The notes: generated by a model from the sequence alone, not told the origin. A DNA stretch of 23,035 nucleotides from Histomonas meleagridis 2922-C6/04-290x (GCA_020184695.1 JAANOX010000209.1:1-23035), one strand, 5' to 3'. Shown: positions 5,402 through 17,257, numbered from the stretch's first letter. Program-made: numbers and translations.

Positions 5402-7611
5402 ATGCTCGTCTTTTCATCAATTCTGTATGCTTTTCATTCTATCAAGCTTAATGCAACTTTTCAAGCTCCCTACGGATGTGGAAAAGGAAGTGTCAAACTT
5501 ACATGGAATAAAAATGAAATCAATGATAATACTTATTATAAAATTTTTCAAAAAACATCGGAAGATGACTACGGTTGGGAAGTAATAAGTACGTATAAGA
5601 AAGATACATATATTAATGTTTTGAATATTTATCCTTCAAATAGTAGTAAAGGCCAGAAATCAAATTCAACACCTTTTCCTATTCCCATAGCAGATATGAA
5701 ATTTAATTCTCAAAAGGGTGATCCTGTGGAATACCCTCTATCAGCATCTTTAAAAGTTTGGATGGAAGGTGGTAAGATAAATGGAGTAACCTCACAAGCT
5801 TATGGCAACAATACTGATACAGACGAAACAATAATGAATGTAACACTTATTTCAATTGATGAATTTGAAGCAGCAGTTAGAAATGATAGTGAATGGGTAT
5901 ATCTGTTTGATGTTATTGTTCTTGGTTTCTGGACTGAAAATGGAGGCTTTTCTCTCTCAACAGAATGTTCAGAGAAAATTATTCAGCAATACATTCAAAG
6001 AGGATATGGTTTTCTTGCAGGTCATGGAGTATTATCTCCATTATTTTGCAATATGACCGATGAAGGATACAAGGCTGCAAGCTTAGTATCAATTAGTAAC
6101 TTGTTTGGAATGGAAGTTGAACTAGCAAAATATCTAGTGCTCGATCCAGTAATATTTATCTTCATAATGATAGCTTAATTCATAAGTATCCATGGAAACT
6201 TAAAAATCCGAATAAAGAAAAACATGAAATTTCCGAGACATATACAACAAACCAAACTACCAGCGGCAATATTAGGTTTTATCTGAGTTATTATGATGAT
6301 GAAAAAAAATCCAAATTTTATCTCACAACATACGGCAATACTGCAGTAATTCAATTAAGAGAAAATCCAAATTATTACGAAAAAAAAATCCTTACGAATA
6401 CAATTTTTCACCTGAAGCAAAGAATAAATGAAAATCATTTTGAAGATCATGTCTATTCTCAAGATTTAGCAAAGCCATTAAAACCAGAAATTAGTTATGA
6501 TAAAACTAATCACATTATTAAAGTACATGCTGATGATGAAGGAACTAAATATTTCTACAAAGTTAAAGAGTATGATTATACTGGAAATTGTATCTCAGAG
6601 TCAAATGTAGCAAGTGTCGATGTTGTTACAGGAATATTTAAATATTTATATATAATTAATAATGATGATGATGTTTCGAGATCAGATAAAGAGGAAGAAT
6701 CACTCAATGGTTTTATTAACATAAGTGATAAAAAAATAACAAATTCACACTATATTCATGTAAGTGCTGTTGATAATGCTAATAACATTGGAGGAAAAAC
6801 ATCATGCAGATTAATGGAAATTACACAAGAACCAATCACATATCCATTTTCACCAAGTAATACATTTTTTAAATCAAATACATATACACAAAGTAATACA
6901 TATACTAAGTCAAATACATATTCTAAATCGAATACATATTCTAAATCAAACACATATACTAAATCAAACACATATACTAAATCAAACACATATACTAAAT
7001 CAAACACATATACACAAAGTAATACATACACTAATTCGAATACATATACACAAAGTAATACATTTTCTAAATCGAATACATTTTCTAAATCGAATACATA
7101 TACACAAAGTAATACATTTACAAATACATTAAAATCAGGTGAAATATTGACACATTCGTATATTATTACACAATCGTTATATATCACACAAACGATTATT
7201 AATCAAACATTTATAACGGAGACACAACTTTTCACAGAAATTGAACGAACAGAAACATATATTCGAACTGAATTTATATATTATAAATATAATGTTGTTC
7301 AATTTTCATCATATTATTATTTTTATTCTGATTTTTATACTATTATTGAAGGATACGAAATATCAGGAGAAGAAGGACTTTCTACAGAAGTTTTAATTGG
7401 TATTATTTGTGGATCGATTGGTATTTTATTTATTCTTATTGGGATTATCATGTTTTTAATTAAAAGTAATCATAATAACAACGAACGAAAAGAAGACGAT
7501 GGAGAATCAGAAGAAAGTATATTGACAGGAATCAAAGAACCAATTCAAGAAGAAGATGTCAACAAAGACATCAGCACATTTGTTCTTGGGGAAGATGACA
7601 AATGGCTATGA
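5402..7611 (+). pseudogene. Type-I membrane surface protein, paralog 1, with one frameshift near 6127-6130 (about 736 aa if repaired)
   Basis: Frame 2 from ATG 5402 aligns with paralogs 2 and 3 to ...LFGMEVE. Frame 1 is stop-free from 6121 to TGA 7609-7611 and continues the homology (LIHKYPWKL...FYLTTYGNTAVIQL...KILTNTIFHLKQR...VDNANNIG, SNT stalk, TM VLIGIICGSIGILFILIGIIMFLI, acidic tail). One extra A in the A4 run at 6127-6130 restores the frame. May be a real lesion or a sequencing error. Confidence 0.75.
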
Positions 7612-7651
7612 TCATAAAATAGAGCGATTCATAATATTGATATCGAATTTA
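6851..7651 (+). repeat. Left arm of ~800-bp inverted repeat (partner 8283-9081)
   Basis: 6851-7621 is the reverse complement of 8311-9081 in every stretch I compared. After a 2-nt indel, 7624-7651 matches 8283-8310. Confidence 0.93.
6856..7125 (+). repeat. 18-bp tandem repeat, 15 units encoding SNT(Y/F)(T/S/F)(K/Q/N) stalk
   Basis: Direct translation SNTFFK SNTYTQ SNTYTK SNTYSK ... SNTFTN. Confidence 0.92.
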
Positions 7652-8282
7652 ATCGATAAAACTTAGCCAAAAAAAAGTAAAACAAATTCCATAAAAAAAA
7701 AACTAGTTTATTTAATGTTACTGTTAATAAGCTGATCAATTTTCTGGAACTTCTATATTGTATGATTTGGAAAAAATTAGTTCTATGTGATAACCTATGA
7801 TTAACATACTGATAATTATTACTCATATCAAATATTTAAAATTTGATATTGTAGCATAAGGATAGATAAAGAAACAAAAATAGAGAAAGTTTTATAAAAG
7901 TTCCTGATGAAGATGTACATGATGTTCATCATTTTAATTTCAAAATTTATGAAAATGTTTGCTAACAAAAAATTATTCTTTTTAGATTCTGATTCCAAAT
8001 TAAAAAATGTAATAACAGTATTCCCAGTATTAAATTCATGACAATTTTATACCTTAATTTCTTTTGATGTAACTGTTGATTAAAGTTCCTGAAATATATG
8101 ATAAAATAATATAAAATTTTGATTAATTTTATATTTATATAACGTATACAATATGTAAATATAATATCAAGAATGTATTTTTATTTGTTTCTATTGGGTT
8201 TTTAAGTTATAGACATAAAATAAAATCAAATTAAATTGTGACCATTCAAAGAATATCTTAAGATCCTAATAGAAAAATTATA

Positions 8283-9081
8283 TAAATTCGATATCAATAT
8301 TATGAATCGCTATTTTATGATCATAGCCATTTGTCATCTTCCCCAAGAACAAATGTGCTGATGTCTTTGTTGACATCTTCTTCTTGAATTGGTTCTTTGA
8401 TTCCTGTCAATATACTTTCTTCTGATTCTCCATCGTCTTCTTTTCGTTCGTTGTTATTATGATTACTTTTAATTAAAAACATGATAATCCCAATAAGAAT
8501 AAATAAAATACCAATCGATCCACAAATAATACCAATTAAAACTTCTGTAGAAAGTCCTTCTTCTCCTGATATTTCGTATCCTTCAATAATAGTATAAAAA
8601 TCAGAATAAAAATAATAATATGATGAAAATTGAACAACATTATATTTATAATATATAAATTCAGTTCGAATATATGTTTCTGTTCGTTCAATTTCTGTGA
8701 AAAGTTGTGTCTCCGTTATAAATGTTTGATTAATAATCGTTTGTGTGATATATAACGATTGTGTAATAATATACGAATGTGTCAATATTTCACCTGATTT
8801 TAATGTATTTGTAAATGTATTACTTTGTGTATATGTATTCGATTTAGAAAATGTATTCGATTTAGAAAATGTATTACTTTGTGTATATGTATTCGAATTA
8901 GTGTATGTATTACTTTGTGTATATGTGTTTGATTTAGTATATGTGTTTGATTTAGTATATGTGTTTGATTTAGTATATGTGTTTGATTTAGAATATGTAT
9001 TCGATTTAGAATATGTATTTGACTTAGTATATGTATTACTTTGTGTATATGTATTTGATTTAAAAAATGTATTACTTGGTG
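8283..9081 (-). repeat. Right arm of ~800-bp inverted repeat (partner 6851-7651)
   Basis: As for the left arm. The ORF-track translations of both arms are identical on both strands. The spacer 7652-8282 is 631 bp. Confidence 0.93.
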
Positions 9082-10638
9082 TATATAACTAGATTTAGTA
9101 TATGTATTACTTTGTGTAAATATATTGGATTTAGTATACGTATTTGATTTCGTAAATGTATTTGTTTCAGGCTTTATTGTTGTTATCTTCTGAATGCCTT
9201 TTATATTAAATGTTGATATTGATCCAATATTACTGGCATTATCAATTGCTGCAATATGAATGTAATTTTCGAAATTTCCAGCTATATTAAAATCAATAAT
9301 ATTATTTGATGTAGAATGATCAAGATCTTTAACGTCTGACCGCCATTTCGTGTTAAAAGTATAAATGTATTTTGTTATATTGGTTTCGACCTTTATCGTT
9401 ATTTTATTTGACTCATCAATAAGATTTCCTTCATAGTCATATGCTTGAACCTTGTATTCATATTCAGTTCCAACATCATGAGCAATAATATATAGACAAT
9501 TATTTTCTGTATTGTATACAAGATAATCGATTTCAGGGCCATTTTTATCATGTGCATAGATATGATCTTCAAATGTATTATTTGTTGTTCTCTGCTTCAG
9601 ATGGAAAATTGTGTTTGCAAGAATCTTTTTCTCTATTTCAGTAGGCATGAAATTTTCATTATCAATTTTTAGTTGAATCATTGCTGCATTATTATTTGTC
9701 GTGAGATAGAATCTATTTTTTGCTTCGGTTCTATATTCTGTTATAAGTGAAAACCAAATATCCCCTGTGGCAGACTGAAATGTTGTTTTGGTATCAGTAA
9801 TCGTGATTTCATCTCTATAATTTCCAATATTCCATGGGTATTTTGTAAGTAATCCTTTATTACGAAGTCTGATTTTAGAAGAAGAGTACTGGTCAAAATG
9901 ACCATTATCGATTTCTTTAACTTTAATTCCAAACATATCACGAATAAGAACTAAGCTTTCAGGAATATATTCACCATCTTCATAATCACAAAAAATATAT
10001 GATAATGTACCATGTCCTGCAAGAAATCCATATCCCCGATTGATGTATTCTCTAATGGTTTGATTCGAACTCTTTGTAGAAAGAGAATAACCACCATTTT
10101 CTTCTCAAAATCCAAGAACAATAACATCAAAGTGATATATCCATTCATCATTATTTTCAACTTTTGTTTCGAATTCATCAATTGTAATAGTTGTTACATT
10201 CATAATCGGTTTGTTGGTCTCACCAATGGTAATATTACCATAAGCAAATGATGTCTCGTCATCAATTGAACCACCTTCCATCCAAACCTTCAATGATGCT
10301 GATTTGGGTAAACACTTATCATTTGCATCAATACCAAACTGCATTCTTGCATCGGGAATATAATATTTCCAATTTCTAATCGTTTTTTGACCTTTAGTAC
10401 TGTTGGACATTGATGGATAAATATTTAAGACATTAATGGGATTTCGATTCTCATATGTACTTATTGTCTCCCAATTATTATTCCATTGCAAAATTTTATA
10501 GTACACATGATTTACATTAATTAGTTTCGTTTCCCACTGAAGATATACCCCTCCTTTCCCATTTGCATATGTAGTATTGGAGGTAGCATTGAGTATTATA
10601 GTTTGGTTCGATATAATCAGCAAAATACATATGAACAT
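8321..10638 (-). pseudogene. Type-I membrane surface protein, paralog 2, with an in-frame TGA and a frameshift
   Basis: ATG 10638 (MFICILLIISNQTIILNATS). TGA at 10105-10107 sits where paralogs have Trp (VLGF*EENGG vs VLGFWTENGG and VLGFWYYNGG). The frame then continues without a shift (GYSLSTKSSNQTIREYINRGYGFLAGHG) into the 8800-9936 ORF. A frameshift near 9082-9090 separates this from the SNT stalk, TM and tail identical to paralog 1. Confidence 0.8.
8807..9165 (-). repeat. 18-bp SNT stalk repeat of paralog 2 (about 4 private units plus 15 units identical to paralog 1)
   Basis: Minus-strand translation TNTFTK SNTYTK SNIFTQ SNTYTK, then a frameshift, then the paralog-1 array. Confidence 0.85.
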
Positions 10639-11686
10639 TAGAAGAAAAAGAACTCTTTTGACCGATATACAATGATTCACGTGGTGTTGTTTTAAATTGA
10701 GACAAAAGTAATAACTTTTTCAGACATAATTGTTGGTTTGTCAATTGAAATTTCTGAGTGAACAAATGGTGTTATTTCAACAACTGTTGTTTTTTCAAAT
10801 TTGAATCAAACCCCCAAATTGCGTCGAATTTTATGAAAAGTTCACATGAATAAGGGATGCAAAATAGGCTTTTCTTCATTTCATTTATTATTTATCTCAG
10901 ACATTATTCAACTTGAATTTGTAACAGAGTGGTTTAGATACAGTGGGTTCATTATCTTGAATTCAAAAATAGTTATCACTATTGATTAAGTTAAAAAAAA
11001 TTCAGTTAATATCATATGTTGAATCAAATCATAATTAAAGAGTTTCATTTTTACTAAGTAATTCATATGGATTCTTTAAATTGACAAAGAATGTTTTCAA
11101 AGATTAAGAATTTTCTTAATAAAATTCGTGCTTTTCTTTTATCTAGAATGTATCTTCATATATATTTAAAAAAATTGTATTTTCTTTAGATGTTGTGAAT
11201 ATAAATCAGAGAAATTGAACATTGCGTTAAATGTTGTTGTTTCTTCATCATTTTTAATGCTTTTTTTTAAACTGCTTCATATAATTACCTTATTTAATAC
11301 ATTTTCAAACTTTCTACAAACAACACCAATTATATTAAAATTTTTATTAAATTACAATTTCTATCATTATTAATATCATTATTATACTTGAAAAGGGAAT
11401 AAAAATCAATATTAATATTAACATTTAAAATCAATCAACATGAATTGGAAACATTCTTCATATCAAATATTTATGAATACAATAAAAATTGATTTTATTT
11501 TCATGATGAGCAAAATATTATATCAACATAAATCTATTAATCATGCATTGAAATTTGATATTTGATGTTTATAACCATTTGTCATCTTCACCAAGAACAA
11601 ATGCACTGATTTCTTTATTCACATCTTCTTCTTGTGTTGGTAAATTTCCGTTACTAACTGCACTTTCTTTCGATTTTTCATTTCGT

Positions 11687-12133
11687 TTGTTATTATGATT
11701 ACTTTTAATTAAAAACATGATAATCCCAATAAGAATAAATAAAATACCAATCGATCCACAAATAATACCAATTAAAACTTCTGTAGAAAGTCCTTCTTCT
11801 CCTGATATTTCGTATCCTTCAATAATAGTATAAAAAAATCAGAATAAAAAAATAATAATATGATGAAAATTGAACAACATTATATTTATAATATATAAAT
11901 TCAGTTCGAATATATGTTTCTGTTCGTTCAATTTCTGTGAAAAGTTGTGTCTCCGTTATAAATGTTTGATTAATAATCGTTTGTGTGATATATAACGATT
12001 GTGTAATAATATACGAATGTGTCAATATTTCACCTGATTTTAATGTATTTGTAAATGTATTACTTTGTGTATATGTATTCGATTTAGAAAATGTATTCGA
12101 TTTAGAAAATGTATTACTTTGTGTATATGTATT
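11687..12133. repeat. Direct repeat of 8451-8893 (shared stalk end and TM region)
   Basis: Identical in the stretches compared, at offset 3240 (3236 on the other side of the two A runs), apart from the two homopolymer length differences. Confidence 0.9.
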
Positions 12134-12244
12134 TGATTTAGTAAATGTATATGACTTAGAATATGTATTTGAATTAGTAAATGTATTTGAATTAGTAAAT
12201 GTATTTGAATTAGAATATGTATTCGATTTCGAAAATGTATTTGA
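12047..12244 (-). repeat. 18-bp SNT stalk repeat of paralog 3, 11 units
   Basis: Translation SNTFSK SNTYSN SNTFTN SNTFTN SNTYSK SYTFTK SNTYTQ ... SNTFTN. Confidence 0.9.
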
Positions 12245-14287
12245 TGGCACAACTGAACTTGCCTTTGAGTATATATTTGATGTCCAAGCTGTTATGTGCT
12301 CTTCTTTTTTGATTTTATTGATTTTTCTGTCAAACATTTCTCCAATGTTGTTGGCATTATCTATTATTTGAATATGAACATAATCATCATAATATTCTGA
12401 GTATTCAAATTCGATTATATTCTCTTCAATTTCGGCGAAATATTGATCAGTATCGCATGTTCTCTTTTCATTAATTTTGTATTTATATCTTGAAATACCT
12501 GTCGTAACATTAACAGTTTCTTCGTTTGATTCAGTAATGTAATTTCCTTCATTATCATATGCTACAACTTTGTATGTATATGAACTTCCAAGATCATAAG
12601 CATAAATTCTTATCCTTTTTTTATGATGTATTATGTTTTTTGAAATTGATGATACTTTCGGGGCTTCCCAATCATGCGAGTAAAAATGATCTTCAAAATG
12701 TTCATCGGTTGTTCTCTGTTTTAGGTGGAAGATTGTGTTTGCAAGAATTTTCCTCTCTTTTTCTGAAATATCATCACTATTTCCTAATTGAATAACTGCT
12801 GTATTACCATATGTTGTAAGATAGAAATTTTGTTCATTATCATTATTATTCTTAAATGAATACCAAATATCTCCTGAAGCATACTGGTTTGTTGTACTTG
12901 TACTACAAATCGAAATTGTTTCCTCATGAATTTCCCATGGATAATTATTAATAAGTCCATTTCTCTTGCTGTTTGTAATTTCATCAGAGCCAATTCCGTC
13001 AGAACAGCAATTATCAATTTTATCAACTTTATCAATCATAATTCCAAACAACTTGCGGATCGAAACCATACTTGCATCATTGTATTTATCTGTTTCACTA
13101 ATTGTACAAAATATAGGTGACAACACGCCATGCCCTACAAGAAAACCGTGTCCTCTATTAATATAATCTCGAATAGTTTGATTGGAAATATTGGTTGACA
13201 ATGAGTATCCTCCATTATAATACCAGAAGCCAAGAACAACGACATCAAACTGATATATCCATTGAGTGTCATTCGCGATTGCTTCTTCGAATTCAGCAAT
13301 AGATTTAAGTGTTACATTCATTGTCATTTCATTAGTTTCGTTATAAAAACTGTAAGTATCTGATGAAGTATTATCAATTTTTCCTCCTTCCATCCAAACC
13401 TTCAATGAAGCAGATTCGGGTATAGTCCGTTCATACTCATTTGAGACAGTCTTAAATGACATTGAAACAGTTGGAATGGAAAATTTTTCTTCTGAATTTG
13501 ATTCATATCCTTTACTACTATTTGAAGGATAAATATTCAAAACCTTAATGGGAACTCCTTTTGTGTATGTGCTTATTGCCTCCCAATCATTATCATTGAT
13601 TTTTCGAAAAATTTTATAATGAGAAAAATTCGAATAATTACCATTAATTTTCCATTTAAGATCAACGCCACCTTTCCCCCGACCATACGAAGAATTGGAA
13701 GTAGCATTTAAATTAATTTCAATAATAGATATAACACCAAAGATACAAAAGATCATTTGTTTTGTGAAAATCAAACTACAGAATATTTTGAACTGCGATA
13801 AAGTCATTTGACAACTTTTCACGGCTCTTAACAACTTTTTCAAATATGCATACTCAAAATCGAAAGCATTCTTTCGGAAGTGAAATACAATCGATCGGTT
13901 TCAATTGAATTGTCTTACAAAAAGTTTTATCGTTTTCCCCTTGATTTCCAGTTTATTACTGTGACAGGTTAGGCGTTAACCAAACAAACACAGTGAAAGA
14001 ATGTTGCAAAAATCAAATCCAACTTTGCTCGTGTTTTATATCTAGGTTGTCTCAACAAGTCAAAGCAACTTCAAATTTTAAACACCATTTGGCCTTTTTT
14101 CGTTTTATCTACTTAAATAAAGCTTATAAAATGAATTAACAAACAATAAATCTTTTCATATCCTTTTCATATTAATTTCCAAAGAAATTATTTCTATATA
14201 TATCACAACAATTTTTGAATTTTTTAACATTAATGTTAAATGAATTCATAAATGCATTATTATTTTTATTTAAATCTGTATTAAAAA

Positions 14288-15664
14288 TCACGTATTTTCT
14301 TGAGGTTCTGAGACCAAATCAAGAAATGTTGTAACTGTTTCCCCAACTTCATTTTCCCCATTTTCTTTTGCAATTTCTTCTAATGTGTTCAATGCTCCAT
14401 TTTGTTCAAATATGCCGGTTACCATTTGTGTGAAGTCGTCTGTATTAATCTTTGTGATCAAACAATTCATTGTGTATGCAACATCTGATGCGACTTCTAC
14501 ACCGCTAAAGACGCATTCACTCATCATCTCAATAATTGTTTCATTAAAAAATTCGTTTGCATCTTCTTCTGTTGATTTCATAGCAAATTCTCTTAACAAT
14601 GGAATGAGTAATACTTTGATACCAAATGAACATGAATTGAAAATATTCCAAAAATCATTTGATATCATCCTAAGAATGAGATCATGAACATACTCTTGTC
14701 CATTCATTGTCCAAACTCGAAGCATTTGCATTAAGTTAATGATGACTTTGGTATCATCCCACCGGAAACAACTTAAAACATCTGAAATAATATCAAATTT
14801 ATCAAATTCTTCAAAAGGGAAATCTGGAACTTGACTAATTTGATAAAGGAAATTTGCACATGTTCTGCGAAGTTTTTTATGATTTGAACGCAGACCTTCT
14901 GAAATTACACTAAGTAAAGATTGTTGAAAAAAGATTTCATATATTGAATATGTCTTGGAAAAAAGTTGAAGAAGACCTTTCAAACCACAATGTTTCGCAT
15001 ATGGAAGTTCTTCATGACAAATAGATATGAAAAAAGGAATGGCATGATTCTGAAACGAAACTTGATACTGACCAAAATCTTGTTTAGATGAAGCAAGAAA
15101 AAATTTGCACTTGGATTCATAGACTTCTTTTGTAGGACATTGAAGAGAACTCATTGTATCAATAATTCCATTTTCAAAAACTGCTTCTCGAAGTGTGAGT
15201 GATTTTTCGATGGAATACATTGCCACAAAGATCGCATAAATTATTATTTCTTGTTCATCACTTTTATTGATAAGAAGATTGATCCACTCATAAAATCGTG
15301 TATGAGCTAAAAGCTCTTGTTTCTCTTGTTCAAAAATTTGCGTAATGTAGCAAAAAGATAAAATAACAGCTCTTTGTGTTCTTGTATCTTGTAAATAATT
15401 TAAATAAGCAAAGAAGACATCAGGACTCATTTCTTCTAATACAAAATTTGTATTCCTTCTTAAATAATCAGCAATTTGGAAAACAGCATAAAAACTATTA
15501 TTTTGACTTAAATCCATTAATGCATTTCTAACTTGACTTTTAGAAAGCATTTCTTGTTCCTTTTCATTTCCATCCTTTTGTTCATGAACCAAATCCAAAA
15601 AATCTGTCTTAATGCCAAATTGTTTAGTTCTTTTTTTTTCGATTTTTTGTCTTTTGTAATTCAT
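14288..15664 (-). CDS. ARM/HEAT-repeat helical protein, importin-alpha-like
   Basis: 458-aa ORF with a basic N-terminus (MNYKRQKIEKKRTKQ), amphipathic helical repeats (LLSVISEGLRSNHKKLRRTCANFLYQIS; DIISDVLSCFRWDDTKVIINLMQML) and an acidic helical end. The family call is by pattern only. Confidence 0.6.
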   Translation of the reverse strand: MNYKRQKIEKKRTKQFGIKTDFLDLVHEQKDGNEKEQEMLSKSQVRNALMDLSQNNSFYAVFQIADYLRRNTNFVLEEMSPDVFFAYLNYLQDTRTQRAVILSFCYITQIFEQEKQELLAHTRFYEWINLLINKSDEQEIIIYAIFVAMYSIEKSLTLREAVFENGIIDTMSSLQCPTKEVYESKCKFFLASSKQDFGQYQVSFQNHAIPFFISICHEELPYAKHCGLKGLLQLFSKTYSIYEIFFQQSLLSVISEGLRSNHKKLRRTCANFLYQISQVPDFPFEEFDKFDIISDVLSCFRWDDTKVIINLMQMLRVWTMNGQEYVHDLILRMISNDFWNIFNSCSFGIKVLLIPLLREFAMKSTEEDANEFFNETIIEMMSECVFSGVEVASDVAYTMNCLITKINTDDFTQMVTGIFEQNGALNTLEEIAKENGENEVGETVTTFLDLVSEPQENT

Positions 15665-15699: not shown

Positions 15700-17257
15700 A
15701 TGGGGGCAAGTACCTCTGAACCAGGTGCAGAAAATCGCCTTTCTCAACCTGGAACAGATCATGAAGAGTCAAGTGAACAAACTGGCGTAAGCGAACAAAA
15801 TGGTTCATCCGAAGTTGAAGCAGAATCTCTCAACTCAAGTCGAATCGAATCCGACAATACATTAATTCCAATTCAAATTATGACTCAACATAGACGTGGC
15901 GGATTTGTCACCTTCATGTATCTTACAAATACTCTTCTTGGTCCAGGTATTGTTGCAGTCAGTTCAACATTTAAAACAACAGGAATTGGTCCTACAATAA
16001 TTATTGCTATTGCTGCCGCTTTATTATGTTATATTTCATCATCTCTGTTCATCAGTATTCATCATAAACTCGAAGTGAATACACTGAATGAACTTGCAGA
16101 TAAAACATTTGGCGGTAAAGCAGCTCGTGTCATTTTATCTATTCTTTGTCTTTTTTTCGATCTCACACTTGCATCCACAAATCTTGTTATTGGGACAGAT
16201 CAAGTCAAATCTTGGCTTAGCCTTACCGGTCTTAATTTGTTAGGATTCAAAAAATGGTGTTTAATCCTTTTCTTGTATACACTTGTTATCCCTTCTATGC
16301 TCACTATACCACGCCATTTCGAATTTCTTGACGGTTTTCAAAAACTTACGGTGTTTGGAATTGTTTTATATGCTGTCATCATCACCATTAAAGGTTTTAC
16401 GGTAGGCTCTCTTCCAGCTGAAACTGTTATTGGATATTGTTTTGATATGAGCGCATTTACATCTTTTGCAGTTCATGTTTCATCTTTCTGCTTGCCAATT
16501 CATTTGATTCCTTTGATTGTTCATTACAACCCAAAGAAAATAAGGCGAAAAGTGATCTCAGGAATTTCACTTATTTTCGATTTTATTGTAATTGTAACGC
16601 CTGGTGTTGTAGGTTATCTGACGTATGGATCTGATGTCAAATCAGATGTTTTAAATTCATATCCATCAAATGGTATGTTTCATTTGATTTTTTGCTCTTA
16701 AACTTTTTCAGAAAAAGAAACGATATAAAAATTCAGAAAAAACGATCCGTTTATTCTGAAAAAGTTATTCTTTATTTTTTTGAAAGTTTCATGAGCAAAA
16801 ATCTTTTTACTTTTATAACTAACACATAGATGCACTTATGATCTTTGTAAGGGTGATCATATTTTCACTTGTAACTTTCACATATCCACTACTTGTAAAT
16901 TCAATCACTGGGATTTTAGGCGAAATGCTCTTGAATCAGCCAGATCCTGCTGAAATGACACTTGTTCAACGCTTAGTTCTAATTCCTATTGTTAATATTG
17001 TATCTTTTTTGTTGGCACTTATTTCGAGTGATCTTCAATCAACATTAGGTTTAGGAGGAGCAATCACTGGTTGCTTGGTAGCATTTGCATTTCCTGCTTT
17101 TTGTATGTTGAAGTTTACTTCAAAGAAATGGTATCATTATAAGAAAATTTTGTATTTTCTATTTTGTGTTTTTGGTATTATTGTTGGAGGTATTTCAACA
17201 TACACGTCGATTGCAGATAAAATTAGTTGTTATAAGAATGGCTTACATGAATATTAA
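15700..17257 (+). CDS. Amino acid/auxin permease (AAAP, Aa_trans) family transporter; exons 15700-16672 and 16830-17257, 466 aa
   Basis: AAAP motifs FMYLTNTLLGPGIVAVSSTF and GVVGYLTYG, with many TM helices. Removing intron 16673-16829 joins the two track ORFs in frame (YPSN-D-ALMIFVRVIIFSLVTFTYPL) and supplies the C-terminal GLGGAITGCLVAFAFPA helix. Confidence 0.9.
16673..16829 (+). other. 157-nt spliceosomal intron, trichomonad type
   Basis: 5' GTATGT at 16673-16678. 3' ACTAACACATAG at 16818-16829 is one base from the T. vaginalis fused branch/acceptor motif ACTAACACACAG. Splicing restores the reading frame. Confidence 0.92.

What the first reader, a model, noticed from the sequence alone, without database searches (positions are those of the whole stretch)
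5402..13756. Three surface-protein paralogs with variable N-termini and a DNA-identical constant region
The ~470-500-aa extracellular domains differ at roughly half of aligned residues by eye. Yet the end of the stalk and the TM region are nucleotide-identical in all three copies apart from two homopolymers (8451-8893 = 11687-12133 = reverse complement of about 7039-7481), with sharp identity boundaries. That pattern needs recent segmental gene conversion or module swapping, not simple duplication. It resembles a variable-head/constant-anchor cassette locus for surface variation (inference). Recombination between the direct copies would delete paralog 2 and join head 3 to tail 2. Recombination between inverted copies would swap tails.
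Basis: partly seen in the sequence, partly recalled or inferred. Interest (0 to 1): 0.75.

Follow-up and report, generated by a model that had tools for sequence, protein, structure and literature searches.

The report
Gene-converted tails in three broken surface-protein genes
Three neighbouring, anciently diverged surface-protein genes of the poultry parasite Histomonas meleagridis have had their stalk and membrane-anchor ends overwritten with the same DNA by recent gene conversion, but all three read as broken, so this is ordinary multigene-family recombination rather than a working switch.

Summary
Copy 1 (+, 5402-7611) and copy 2 (-, 10638-8321) share a perfect 772-nt inverted block, 6851-7622 = 9081-8310. 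After a 2-nt gap it continues for 27 nt into the 3' UTR. Copy 3 (-, 13807-11569) shares 7039-7481 with both, differing only by two +2 T-run indels. Heads are about 50% identical in protein and near saturation at fourfold sites.

The genome is the attenuated Histomonas meleagridis assembly. The genes belong to its expanded "bacterial Ig-like" membrane family, with at least 70 loci. The head is Fn3-like plus ThuA/GATase1-like, with homologues in Gram-positive sortase-anchored proteins.

Recent local gene conversion is supported. Head/tail reassortment occurs elsewhere: two heads 93-100% identical carry different tail classes, switching inside the hexapeptide array. The same stalk-TM-tail module also sits on BspA LRR genes, and a BspA trio shows the same identical TM-proximal block.

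A dedicated variation cassette is not supported. All three copies are disrupted as assembled: one frameshift, one TGA plus a frameshift, and a frameshift before the TM. Other readers of this scan noted similar conversion mosaics elsewhere in this genome. Reads and the sister assembly could not be checked.

The parts
5402..7611 (+). Copy 1 (c1) of the 'bacterial Ig-like' surface family, reading as a pseudogene. Signal peptide and head occupy 5402-6855. The frame breaks between about 6131 and 6147.
   Evidence: tblastn with P0001 gives frame +2 for 5402-6121 and frame +1 for 6145-7608. The break is not in a homopolymer and has no GTATGT...ACTAACACAYAG intron signals.
6856..7125 (+). c1 stalk: 15 tandem 18-nt units encoding SNT(Y/F)(T/S)x hexapeptides.
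   Evidence: the repeat finder family D2, period 18; translation; coordinates.
7126..7611 (+). c1 anchor module: juxtamembrane segment 7126-7389, TM helix 7390-7461, acidic cytoplasmic tail ending ..GEDDKWL 7462-7608, stop codon 7609-7611.
   Evidence: Translation; coordinates. Homologous modules occur in BspA and family genes across the genome.
6851..7651 (.). c1 arm of the c1/c2 inverted identity tract: 772 nt perfect (6851-7622), a 2-nt gap, then 27 nt perfect (7625-7651).
   Evidence: Exact string test; the repeat finder I1; blastn 99.75% over 801 nt.
7652..8282 (.). AT-rich tail-to-tail intergenic spacer between the inverted arms, unrelated in the two orientations.
   Evidence: Sequence; alignment falls to about 40%.
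8283..9081 (.). c2 arm of the inverted identity tract.
8321..10638 (-). Copy 2 (c2), reading as a pseudogene. An in-frame TGA at 10105-10107 replaces the nearly invariant Trp of the VLGFW motif. The head and tail frames differ by one base at about 9082-9095, at the upstream edge of the identity tract.
   Evidence: Translation with '*'; sequence showing TTT TGA GAA; tblastn frames -2 and -1; junction read; W171 is nearly invariant in alignment A1.
11569..13807 (-). Copy 3 (c3). The head and stalk are intact: the ORF 13843/13807-11819 is 674 aa counted from the upstream TTG at 13843. Two +2 insertions in T5 runs at about 11837-11847 put the TM (identical to c1/c2) and the tail out of frame. As assembled it would give an anchorless product.
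   Evidence: the ORF listing; tblastn frames -1 then -2; alignment; exact blocks and tail-frame translation.
11687..12133 (.). c3 copy of the three-way identical block, equal to c1 7039-7481 and c2 8451-8893. It covers the last five stalk units, the juxtamembrane segment, the TM and the first six tail codons.
   Evidence: Exact blocks of 286 and 150 nt; the repeat finder D3, D6, I16.
11569..11686 (-). c3 cytoplasmic tail, not converted. It has a 12-nt deletion, then about 55% and finally about 87% identity to c1/c2, and still ends ..GEDDKWL.
   Evidence: Alignment; ORF 11569-11718.

Best explanation
This is a local cluster of three old paralogues of the expanded Histomonas meleagridis 'bacterial Ig-like' type-I membrane protein family.

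Architecture: signal peptide; an ectodomain of about 480 aa (Fn3-like, ThuA/GATase1-like, Fn3/Ig-like) of apparent bacterial origin; an 18-nt/hexapeptide Ser/Thr/Asn stalk; a conserved juxtamembrane segment; one TM helix; and an acidic tail ending [DE]DxW[LIM].

At least two recent non-reciprocal recombination events between neighbours (interlocus gene conversion) overwrote the 3' module.
- One patch of about 800 nt lies between the inverted copies 1 and 2.
- One patch of about 440 nt is shared with copy 3.

The tracts start in the in-frame tandem repeat array. They run through the part of the gene that is most conserved family-wide, which supplies the homology. They end where homology fails: just after the TM in copy 3, and about 40 nt past the stop codon in copies 1 and 2.

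Shown: the identity pattern, the old heads, the lesions as assembled, and the same process elsewhere in the genome. Inferred: that the repeat array and TM block act as the recombination substrate; that the events are conversion rather than double crossover; that the three copies are real pseudogenes, or for copy 3 an anchorless form; and that the family acts in adhesion.
For: - Identity blocks and sharp edges.
- Heads are old. They are 49-52% identical in amino acids, fourfold sites give d about 0.8, and terminal branches on the head tree are 0.75-0.94.
- Only the three local copies exceed 90% identity to the block genome-wide. All other tails are 86% or less over short stretches, about 70% overall. 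The donor was therefore local.
- Genome identity: 281 contigs and 43,133,364 bp match the attenuated strain in Table 1 of PMC8529796.
- Family: 99 matches in the genome, most with open frames of 650-770 aa. The best annotated relatives are H. meleagridis 'bacterial Ig-like domain protein' at 39-41%. The paper describes it as the expanded family HOG02302.
- Bacterial homologues carry SpaA, Cna-B or MucBP domains and LPXTG-like ends.
- Fold: AF2 model with pLDDT 87. ThuA-like/GATase1-like hits reach Z 16 with rmsd 2.9 A over 194 residues, plus Fn3 hits.
- Reassortment elsewhere: L029/L030, the head tree and the tail tree.
- Same pattern in the C117 BspA trio: perfect runs of 228-297 nt and 98-99 nt over stalk end, juxtamembrane and TM, with divergent heads and tails. 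The C4 pair is a similar mosaic.
- Lesions.
Against: - No reads and no second assembly could be examined. Perfect identity could be slightly overstated by short-read polishing of an ONT assembly.
- The two T-run indels of copy 3 could be base-calling errors.
- None of the three genes is annotated in public protein sets. There is therefore no outside support for or against the lesions, and no expression data.
- Conversion versus double crossover is not distinguishable from one haplotype.
Confidence: 0.78

Rival explanations
1. Assembly or polishing artefact. The tails are really similar but distinct. Flye repeat handling or three rounds of racon with multi-mapping Illumina reads homogenised them into identical blocks.
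For: The assembly is ONT/Flye --meta polished with racon and subsampled Illumina reads. The contig is only 23 kb. Similar 'identical core' patterns are reported at many places in this genome, which a systematic artefact could also produce.
Against: - Short reads cannot cross-map between sequences that are about 60% identical. The blocks must already be much more alike than the flanks, so conversion is still needed (inference).
- The c1/c2 block (772 nt) and the c3 block (about 440 nt) have different edges, and c3 keeps two private indels inside the block. Homogenisation would tend to erase these.
- Blocks under 1 kb are easily spanned by long reads.
- Most family members have clean 650-770-aa frames, so base accuracy is good.
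Confidence: 0.1
2. Programmed surface-variation cassette. The inverted and direct constant blocks are used at high frequency to re-join heads and anchors, with broken copies serving as a silent donor reservoir.
For: Inverted (c1/c2) and direct (c2/c3) identical blocks exist. Head/tail reassortment has happened repeatedly in the family. Noel et al. suggested that pseudogenes might be a reservoir for BspA diversity (PMC2843621).
Against: - No intact expressed recipient lies in the cluster.
- Recombination between the identical c1/c2 arms would change no protein sequence.
- The same mosaicism is seen in unrelated clusters and reportedly in housekeeping paralogues.
- No recombinase or expression-site feature was found next to the genes.
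- The reassortments seen are old enough to have accumulated substitutions: 1-7% in L029/L030.
Confidence: 0.07
3. Recent whole-gene duplication followed by very fast, selection-driven divergence of the heads, with the tails merely conserved.
For: Ectodomains of surface families often evolve fast, and the three heads do group together on the tree (SH-aLRT 94).
Against: Fourfold synonymous sites in the heads are near saturation, at 49-53% identical against 34% by chance. The tails have no change at all, synonymous or in the 3' UTR. Family-wide the tail is only about 70% conserved, so constraint cannot explain perfect identity.
Confidence: 0.02
4. cDNA-mediated conversion. A reverse-transcribed 3' part of one copy's mRNA served as the donor, which would explain why the c1/c2 tract runs to about 40 nt past the stop codon, roughly a trichomonad 3' UTR length.
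For: The tract ends in the 3' UTR and not at the stop codon.
Against: There is no A-run at the tract end in either copy. The c3 tract ends inside the coding region. Retroelements are very scarce in this genome: 23-32 fragments in Table 1 of PMC8529796.
Confidence: 0.03

Closest known systems
H. meleagridis expanded family of membrane proteins similar to bacterial Ig-like proteins (HOG02302; Palmieri et al. 2021, PMC8529796)
   Same: The head domains are homologous to annotated members (E 1e-98 to 1e-67, 39-41% identity). The architecture is the same: head, SNTFTx stalk, TM and tail.
   Different: These three copies are not annotated in public sets and are disrupted as assembled. The paper calls the family Histomonas-specific, but homologues exist in Tritrichomonas foetus (TRFO_31947), in unnamed eukaryote-like metagenome proteins and in Gram-positive bacteria. 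The paper does not mention gene conversion (0 occurrences).
Trichomonad BspA-like and Pmp surface families sharing a conserved TMD and cytoplasmic tail with endocytic motifs (Noel et al. 2010, PMC2843621; Handrich et al. 2019, PMC6701047)
   Same: Laterally acquired bacterial ectodomains are fused to a eukaryotic TM plus short tail. The tail motifs [DE]DPF and NPxY occur here too. In Histomonas the very same stalk/TM/tail module sits on BspA LRR_5 genes.
   Different: The head is a different fold (ThuA-like plus Fn3). The tail class of this cluster ends [DE]DxW[LIM]. This ending was not among the motif patterns or tail endings quoted in the passages of those papers I read. Nucleotide-identical blocks between neighbours are not mentioned in those passages either.
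Interlocus (ectopic) gene conversion and concerted evolution in tandem multigene families
   Same: A patch of identity is flanked on both sides by old divergence. It lies between physically close paralogues in direct and inverted orientation, and repeats serve as homology.
   Different: Nothing essential differs. The particular feature is that the converted part is the anchor module and the unconverted part is the ligand-binding head.
Silent-cassette antigenic variation systems (trypanosome VSG, Borrelia vlsE, Neisseria pilE/pilS; named from general knowledge)
   Same: Conserved blocks flank variable segments, and pseudogene copies could act as donors.
   Different: Here the constant part is what was copied, not the variable part. 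No expression site, no intact recipient and no evidence of switching were found.
N-terminal domain of Gram-positive sortase-anchored surface proteins (P0006 with SpaA/Cna-B; P0010 with MucBP)
   Same: 30-34% identity over 65-74% of the c3 protein, with E 1e-37 to 1e-41. Shared motifs include GKGG, SLKVWMEGG, GHD and ERK..ANT.FYLKQ.
   Different: The bacterial proteins continue into Cna-B/SpaA or MucBP repeats and an LPXTG-type anchor. The parasite proteins continue into the hexapeptide stalk, TM and cytosolic tail.

Membership tests
H. meleagridis 'bacterial Ig-like' membrane protein family (HOG02302) | Head domain homologous to annotated family members | tested here: met
   E 1.3e-98 to 3.6e-67 against four H. 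meleagridis proteins. There are 99 matches in the own genome. All three copies align over the full head.
H. meleagridis 'bacterial Ig-like' membrane protein family (HOG02302) | Single C-terminal TM anchor after a repeat stalk | tested here: met
   The stalk, TM helix (VLIGIICGSIGILFILIGIIMFLI) and tail are present in the DNA of all three copies. In each copy they are out of frame with, or separated by a stop from, the head.
H. meleagridis 'bacterial Ig-like' membrane protein family (HOG02302) | Intact coding frame (functional member) | tested here: not met
   c1 has a frameshift at about 6131-6147. c2 has TGA at 10105-10107 and a frame break at about 9082-9095. c3 has +4 nt at about 11837-11847. 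This is valid only as far as the assembly is correct.
Interlocus gene conversion tract | Identity patch bounded on both sides by much older divergence in both partners | tested here: met
   772 nt at 100%, against 35-82% upstream and about 40% downstream.
Interlocus gene conversion tract | Synonymous divergence outside the patch far above that inside | tested here: met
   Fourfold-site distance is about 0.75-0.84 in the heads, against 0 substitutions in the blocks.
Interlocus gene conversion tract | Structure confirmed by copy-anchored reads or a second assembly | not testable with these tools
The neighbouring amylase protein is on record on two contigs, the longer 1.375 Mb, presumably the sister assembly, but its DNA could not be fetched.
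Programmed cassette / antigenic-variation locus | An intact expressed recipient gene plus silent donors | tested here: not met
   No copy in the cluster encodes a complete anchored protein as assembled.
Programmed cassette / antigenic-variation locus | Recombinant isoforms within a clonal population | not testable with these tools
   This needs raw long reads or long-read cDNA.
BspA-like (TpLRR, PF13306) surface family | LRR_5 repeats in the ectodomain | tested here: not met
   The c3 protein and P0001 have no Pfam hit. LRR_5 is found only in other genes that share the tail module: L015 at 8.4e-90 and L004 at 3.1e-71.
ThuA-like / class I glutamine amidotransferase-like fold (head core) | Structural match of the central alpha/beta domain | tested here: met
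   VIA-align gives Z 16.0 (2gk3, rmsd 2.9 A over 194 residues), 15.9 (4jqs) and 15.8 (1t0b) for model residues about 60-340. Foldseek gives E 1e-5 with probability 1.0. This shows the fold only; catalytic residues were not examined.

The most novel reading that the evidence does not exclude
The in-frame 18-nt hexapeptide array plus the conserved juxtamembrane/TM block may act as a common recombination platform. More than 150 Histomonas surface genes carry it, from two unrelated laterally acquired head families (BspA LRR and ThuA-Fn3 'Ig-like'). On this reading it re-assorts ectodomains with three sorting-tail classes often enough to create variation within clonal populations, with decayed copies such as these three serving as donors.
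Probability: 0.1. Interest if true: 0.7.

Novelty: new member of a known kind. Interest (0 to 1): 0.38.

Why it matters
It gives a clean, dated example of local gene conversion in Histomonas meleagridis, for which the genome paper (PMC8529796) does not mention gene conversion.

It shows that one of the nine lineage-specific gene family expansions reported for this poultry pathogen is built from modules. The bacterial-type ectodomain is recognisable here as ThuA-like plus Fn3. It is joined to a stalk/TM/tail unit that is shared, and has been exchanged, with the BspA family.

For annotation, members of these families cannot be ordered by one tree, and identical 3' ends will confuse short-read mapping, variant calling and transcript assignment.

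For biology, tail class, and therefore probably trafficking, can be uncoupled from ligand-binding head. It does not by itself reveal a new mechanism.

Tried and rejected
Only the first 10 kb of each cluster was available.
- Exact look-ups of nine ORF versions from the window found none in the public protein collection. Only the neighbouring amylase is on record.
- A tail-only protein search (residues 325-488 of the c1 reading) gave no hit at E <= 0.001. No annotated protein of 269-855 aa therefore carries this exact tail.
- Pfam gives nothing for the head.
- An intron as the explanation for the c1 frame break: rejected. The conserved parabasalid intron ends seen in the neighbouring Aa_trans gene are absent at 6100-6200.
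- An alternative genetic code for the c2 TGA: rejected, because c1/c2/c3 themselves end with TGA.
- Low contig quality as the explanation for all lesions: weakened. The apparent break in Aa_trans is a true intron, and the other neighbours are intact.
- A self-blast of the 10-kb cluster loci with a 90% threshold missed the short perfect blocks, because gapped flanks lowered the HSP identity. The sliding-window alignments were used instead.
- Two word searches of earlier findings returned nothing useful.


Full report
**What the window is.** The window is a whole 23,035-nt contig (C209) of a 43,133,364-bp, 281-contig assembly. These figures are exactly those of the attenuated Histomonas meleagridis strain in Table 1 of Palmieri et al. 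2021 (PMC8529796). That assembly was made with ONT reads in Flye and polished with three rounds of racon using Illumina reads. The neighbouring genes are eukaryotic and parabasalid-like: Rab, three-repeat Myb, amylase, amino-acid transporter, CDC20 and a DUF3447 ankyrin. H. meleagridis is a poultry pathogen, so I describe the lesions but give no way to mend them.

**The observation.** Three paralogues lie at 5402-7611 (+, c1), 10638-8321 (-, c2) and 13807-11569 (-, c3).
- Repeat search, three-way alignment and exact comparison show that c1 6851-7622 is the perfect reverse complement of c2 8310-9081 (772 nt). After a 2-nt gap the match continues for 27 nt (7625-7651 = 8309-8283).
- This tract covers the complete 15-unit 18-nt repeat array of c1 (6856-7125), the juxtamembrane segment (7126-7389), the TM helix (7390-7461), the cytoplasmic tail, the stop codon (7609-7611) and about 40 nt of 3' UTR.
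- c3 is identical to both over c1 7039-7324 and 7332-7481 (= c3 12133-11848 and 11836-11687). The only differences are two +2 insertions in T5 runs.
- The c3 cytoplasmic tail beyond 7481 is not converted. It has a 12-nt deletion, then about 55% and finally about 87% identity.
- Outside the blocks, identity drops within one 60-nt window to 30-80%.
- The heads are 49-52% identical in protein and 62-65% in DNA. Fourfold-degenerate sites are 49-53% identical against 34% expected from base composition, a distance of about 0.8.
- Genome-wide only these three places exceed 90% identity to the block; the next best is 72%.

Zero substitutions next to near-saturated synonymous sites cannot come from duplication plus selection.

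None of the three copies encodes a complete anchored protein as assembled.
- c1 changes frame between about 6131 and 6147. The site is not a homopolymer and lacks intron signals.
- c2 has TGA at 10105-10107 in place of the nearly invariant Trp of the VLGFW motif. Its head frame and tail frame also differ by one base at about 9082-9095, exactly at the upstream edge of the identity tract.
- c3 has an intact head and stalk, but the two T-run insertions (+4 nt, about 11837-11847) put the TM and tail out of frame. The ORF ends at 11819 without an anchor.

Are these lesions assembly errors? Most family members elsewhere have clean open frames of 650-770 aa. The apparent break in the neighbouring transporter gene is a genuine parabasalid intron (16673-16829, GTATGT...ACTAACACATAG, frames join). 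General base quality therefore looks good. The TGA substitution and the non-homopolymer frameshift are probably real. The c3 T-run indels are the least certain. In a BspA trio on contig C117, the only break inside the equivalent perfect block lies at the homologous TAT/TTT-rich 'YYYFYS' spot, so that spot seems prone to slippage.

**What the genes are.**
- The c3 protein finds H. meleagridis 'bacterial Ig-like domain' proteins at 39-41% identity (E down to 1e-98). It also finds a Tritrichomonas foetus protein and unnamed eukaryote-like metagenome proteins.
- It further finds Gram-positive-type proteins in which the same N-terminal domain of about 480 aa is followed by SpaA/Cna-B or MucBP repeats and LPXTG-like ends.
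- Palmieri et al. list this family (HOG02302) among nine lineage-specific expansions, 'likely involved in adhesion'.
- The own genome holds 99 matches, at least about 70 loci.
- Pfam has no model for the head.
- An AlphaFold model built on 24 sequences (pLDDT 87) has a central ThuA-like/class-I-GATase-like domain flanked by Fn3/Ig-like sandwiches. Its best matches are 2gk3 (Z 16.0), 4jqs (Z 15.9) and 1t0b (Z 15.8).

**The tail is a shared module.**
- Searching the genome with the c1 tail finds more than 40 places at about 70% identity. Many of these genes have BspA-type LRR_5 heads, not this head.
- All carry the same order of parts: SNTFTx hexapeptide array, FIYYxY...YYSDFYTI juxtamembrane segment, LIGIICGS TM, then a tail.
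- Three tail classes occur in the family: ending [DE]DxW[LIM] (this cluster), containing EEDPFAxDF, or containing NPLY...DDPFxDDF. The last two resemble the endocytic motifs described for Trichomonas BspA and Pmp tails (PMC2843621, PMC6701047).
- On a tree of heads, tail class changes at least 7 times. On a tree of tails, BspA and 'Ig-like' genes are intermixed.
- The clearest case is L029 (C269) and L030 (C81). They are 93-100% identical through the head, and identity collapses to about 45% inside the hexapeptide array. After that, L029 carries an L027-type tail and L030 an EEDPF-type tail.

**The pattern is not special to this locus.**
- Three BspA genes within about 12 kb on C117 share perfect runs of 228-297 nt and 98-99 nt over stalk end, juxtamembrane and TM. 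Their heads and cytoplasmic tails differ.
- A tandem pair on C4 is a 62-80% / 97-100% mosaic.
- First-stage notes elsewhere in this genome report similar mosaics in BspA pairs and even in VPS28 paralogues (not checked by me).

**Most likely mechanism.** I infer local interlocus gene conversion between neighbouring paralogues. It is seeded in the in-frame 18-nt array and the family-conserved TM-proximal block. It ends where homology fails. At least two events are needed here, because the c1/c2 and c3 tracts have different ends.

A dedicated variation cassette is unlikely. There is no intact recipient. Exchange between the identical c1/c2 arms would change no protein. And the process is generic in this genome.

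**Limits.**
- Polishing artefacts cannot create identity from 60%-identical DNA, but they could have erased a few real differences.
- This could not be tested.
- None of the ORFs is in public protein sets.

**Verdict.** Interest is moderate.

Noticed in passing
window 16673-16829 (+), inside the amino-acid transporter gene 15700-17257: Canonical parabasalid spliceosomal intron of 157 nt, with 5' GTATGT and 3' ACTAACACATAG. It is phase 1, and the two Aa_trans ORFs join in frame across it.
   Followed up: partly
L015, L018, L019 (G000:C117, about 90.6-105.1 kb): Three BspA LRR genes share perfect 228-297-nt and 98-99-nt blocks over stalk end, juxtamembrane and TM, with divergent heads and cytoplasmic tails. 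The single break in the block is at the same TAT/TTT-rich 'YYYFYS' spot where c3 has its indels.
   Followed up: yes
L029 (G000:C269:120613-125016) and L030 (G000:C81:43777-48180): Two family genes on different contigs are 93-100% identical through the head. They switch inside the hexapeptide array to different stalk/TM/tail classes. The L029 tail also ends early, without the DxW motif.
   Followed up: yes
L043 and L045 (G000:C4, about 38.9-49.7 kb): This tandem pair of the NPLY-tail subclass is a mosaic: 62-80% identity in the first kilobase, two 90-nt windows at 100% (alignment columns 1080-1259), and 97-100% over the tail region.
   Followed up: partly
family-wide (loci L004-L050): Three cytoplasmic tail classes occur: C-terminal [DE]DxW[LIM], EEDPFAxDF, and NPLY..DDPFxDDF. 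The first is an extreme C-terminal acidic-Trp-hydrophobic ending whose sorting role is unknown.
   Followed up: partly
P0002, P0003, P0004 (public H. meleagridis models): Several annotated family members start inside the conserved SLKVWMEGG region or just before it. Public gene models of this family therefore seem to be often N-terminally truncated.
   Followed up: no
window 14288-15664 (-): This 458-aa ORF next to c3 has no Pfam match and its exact sequence is not in the public protein collection.
   Followed up: no
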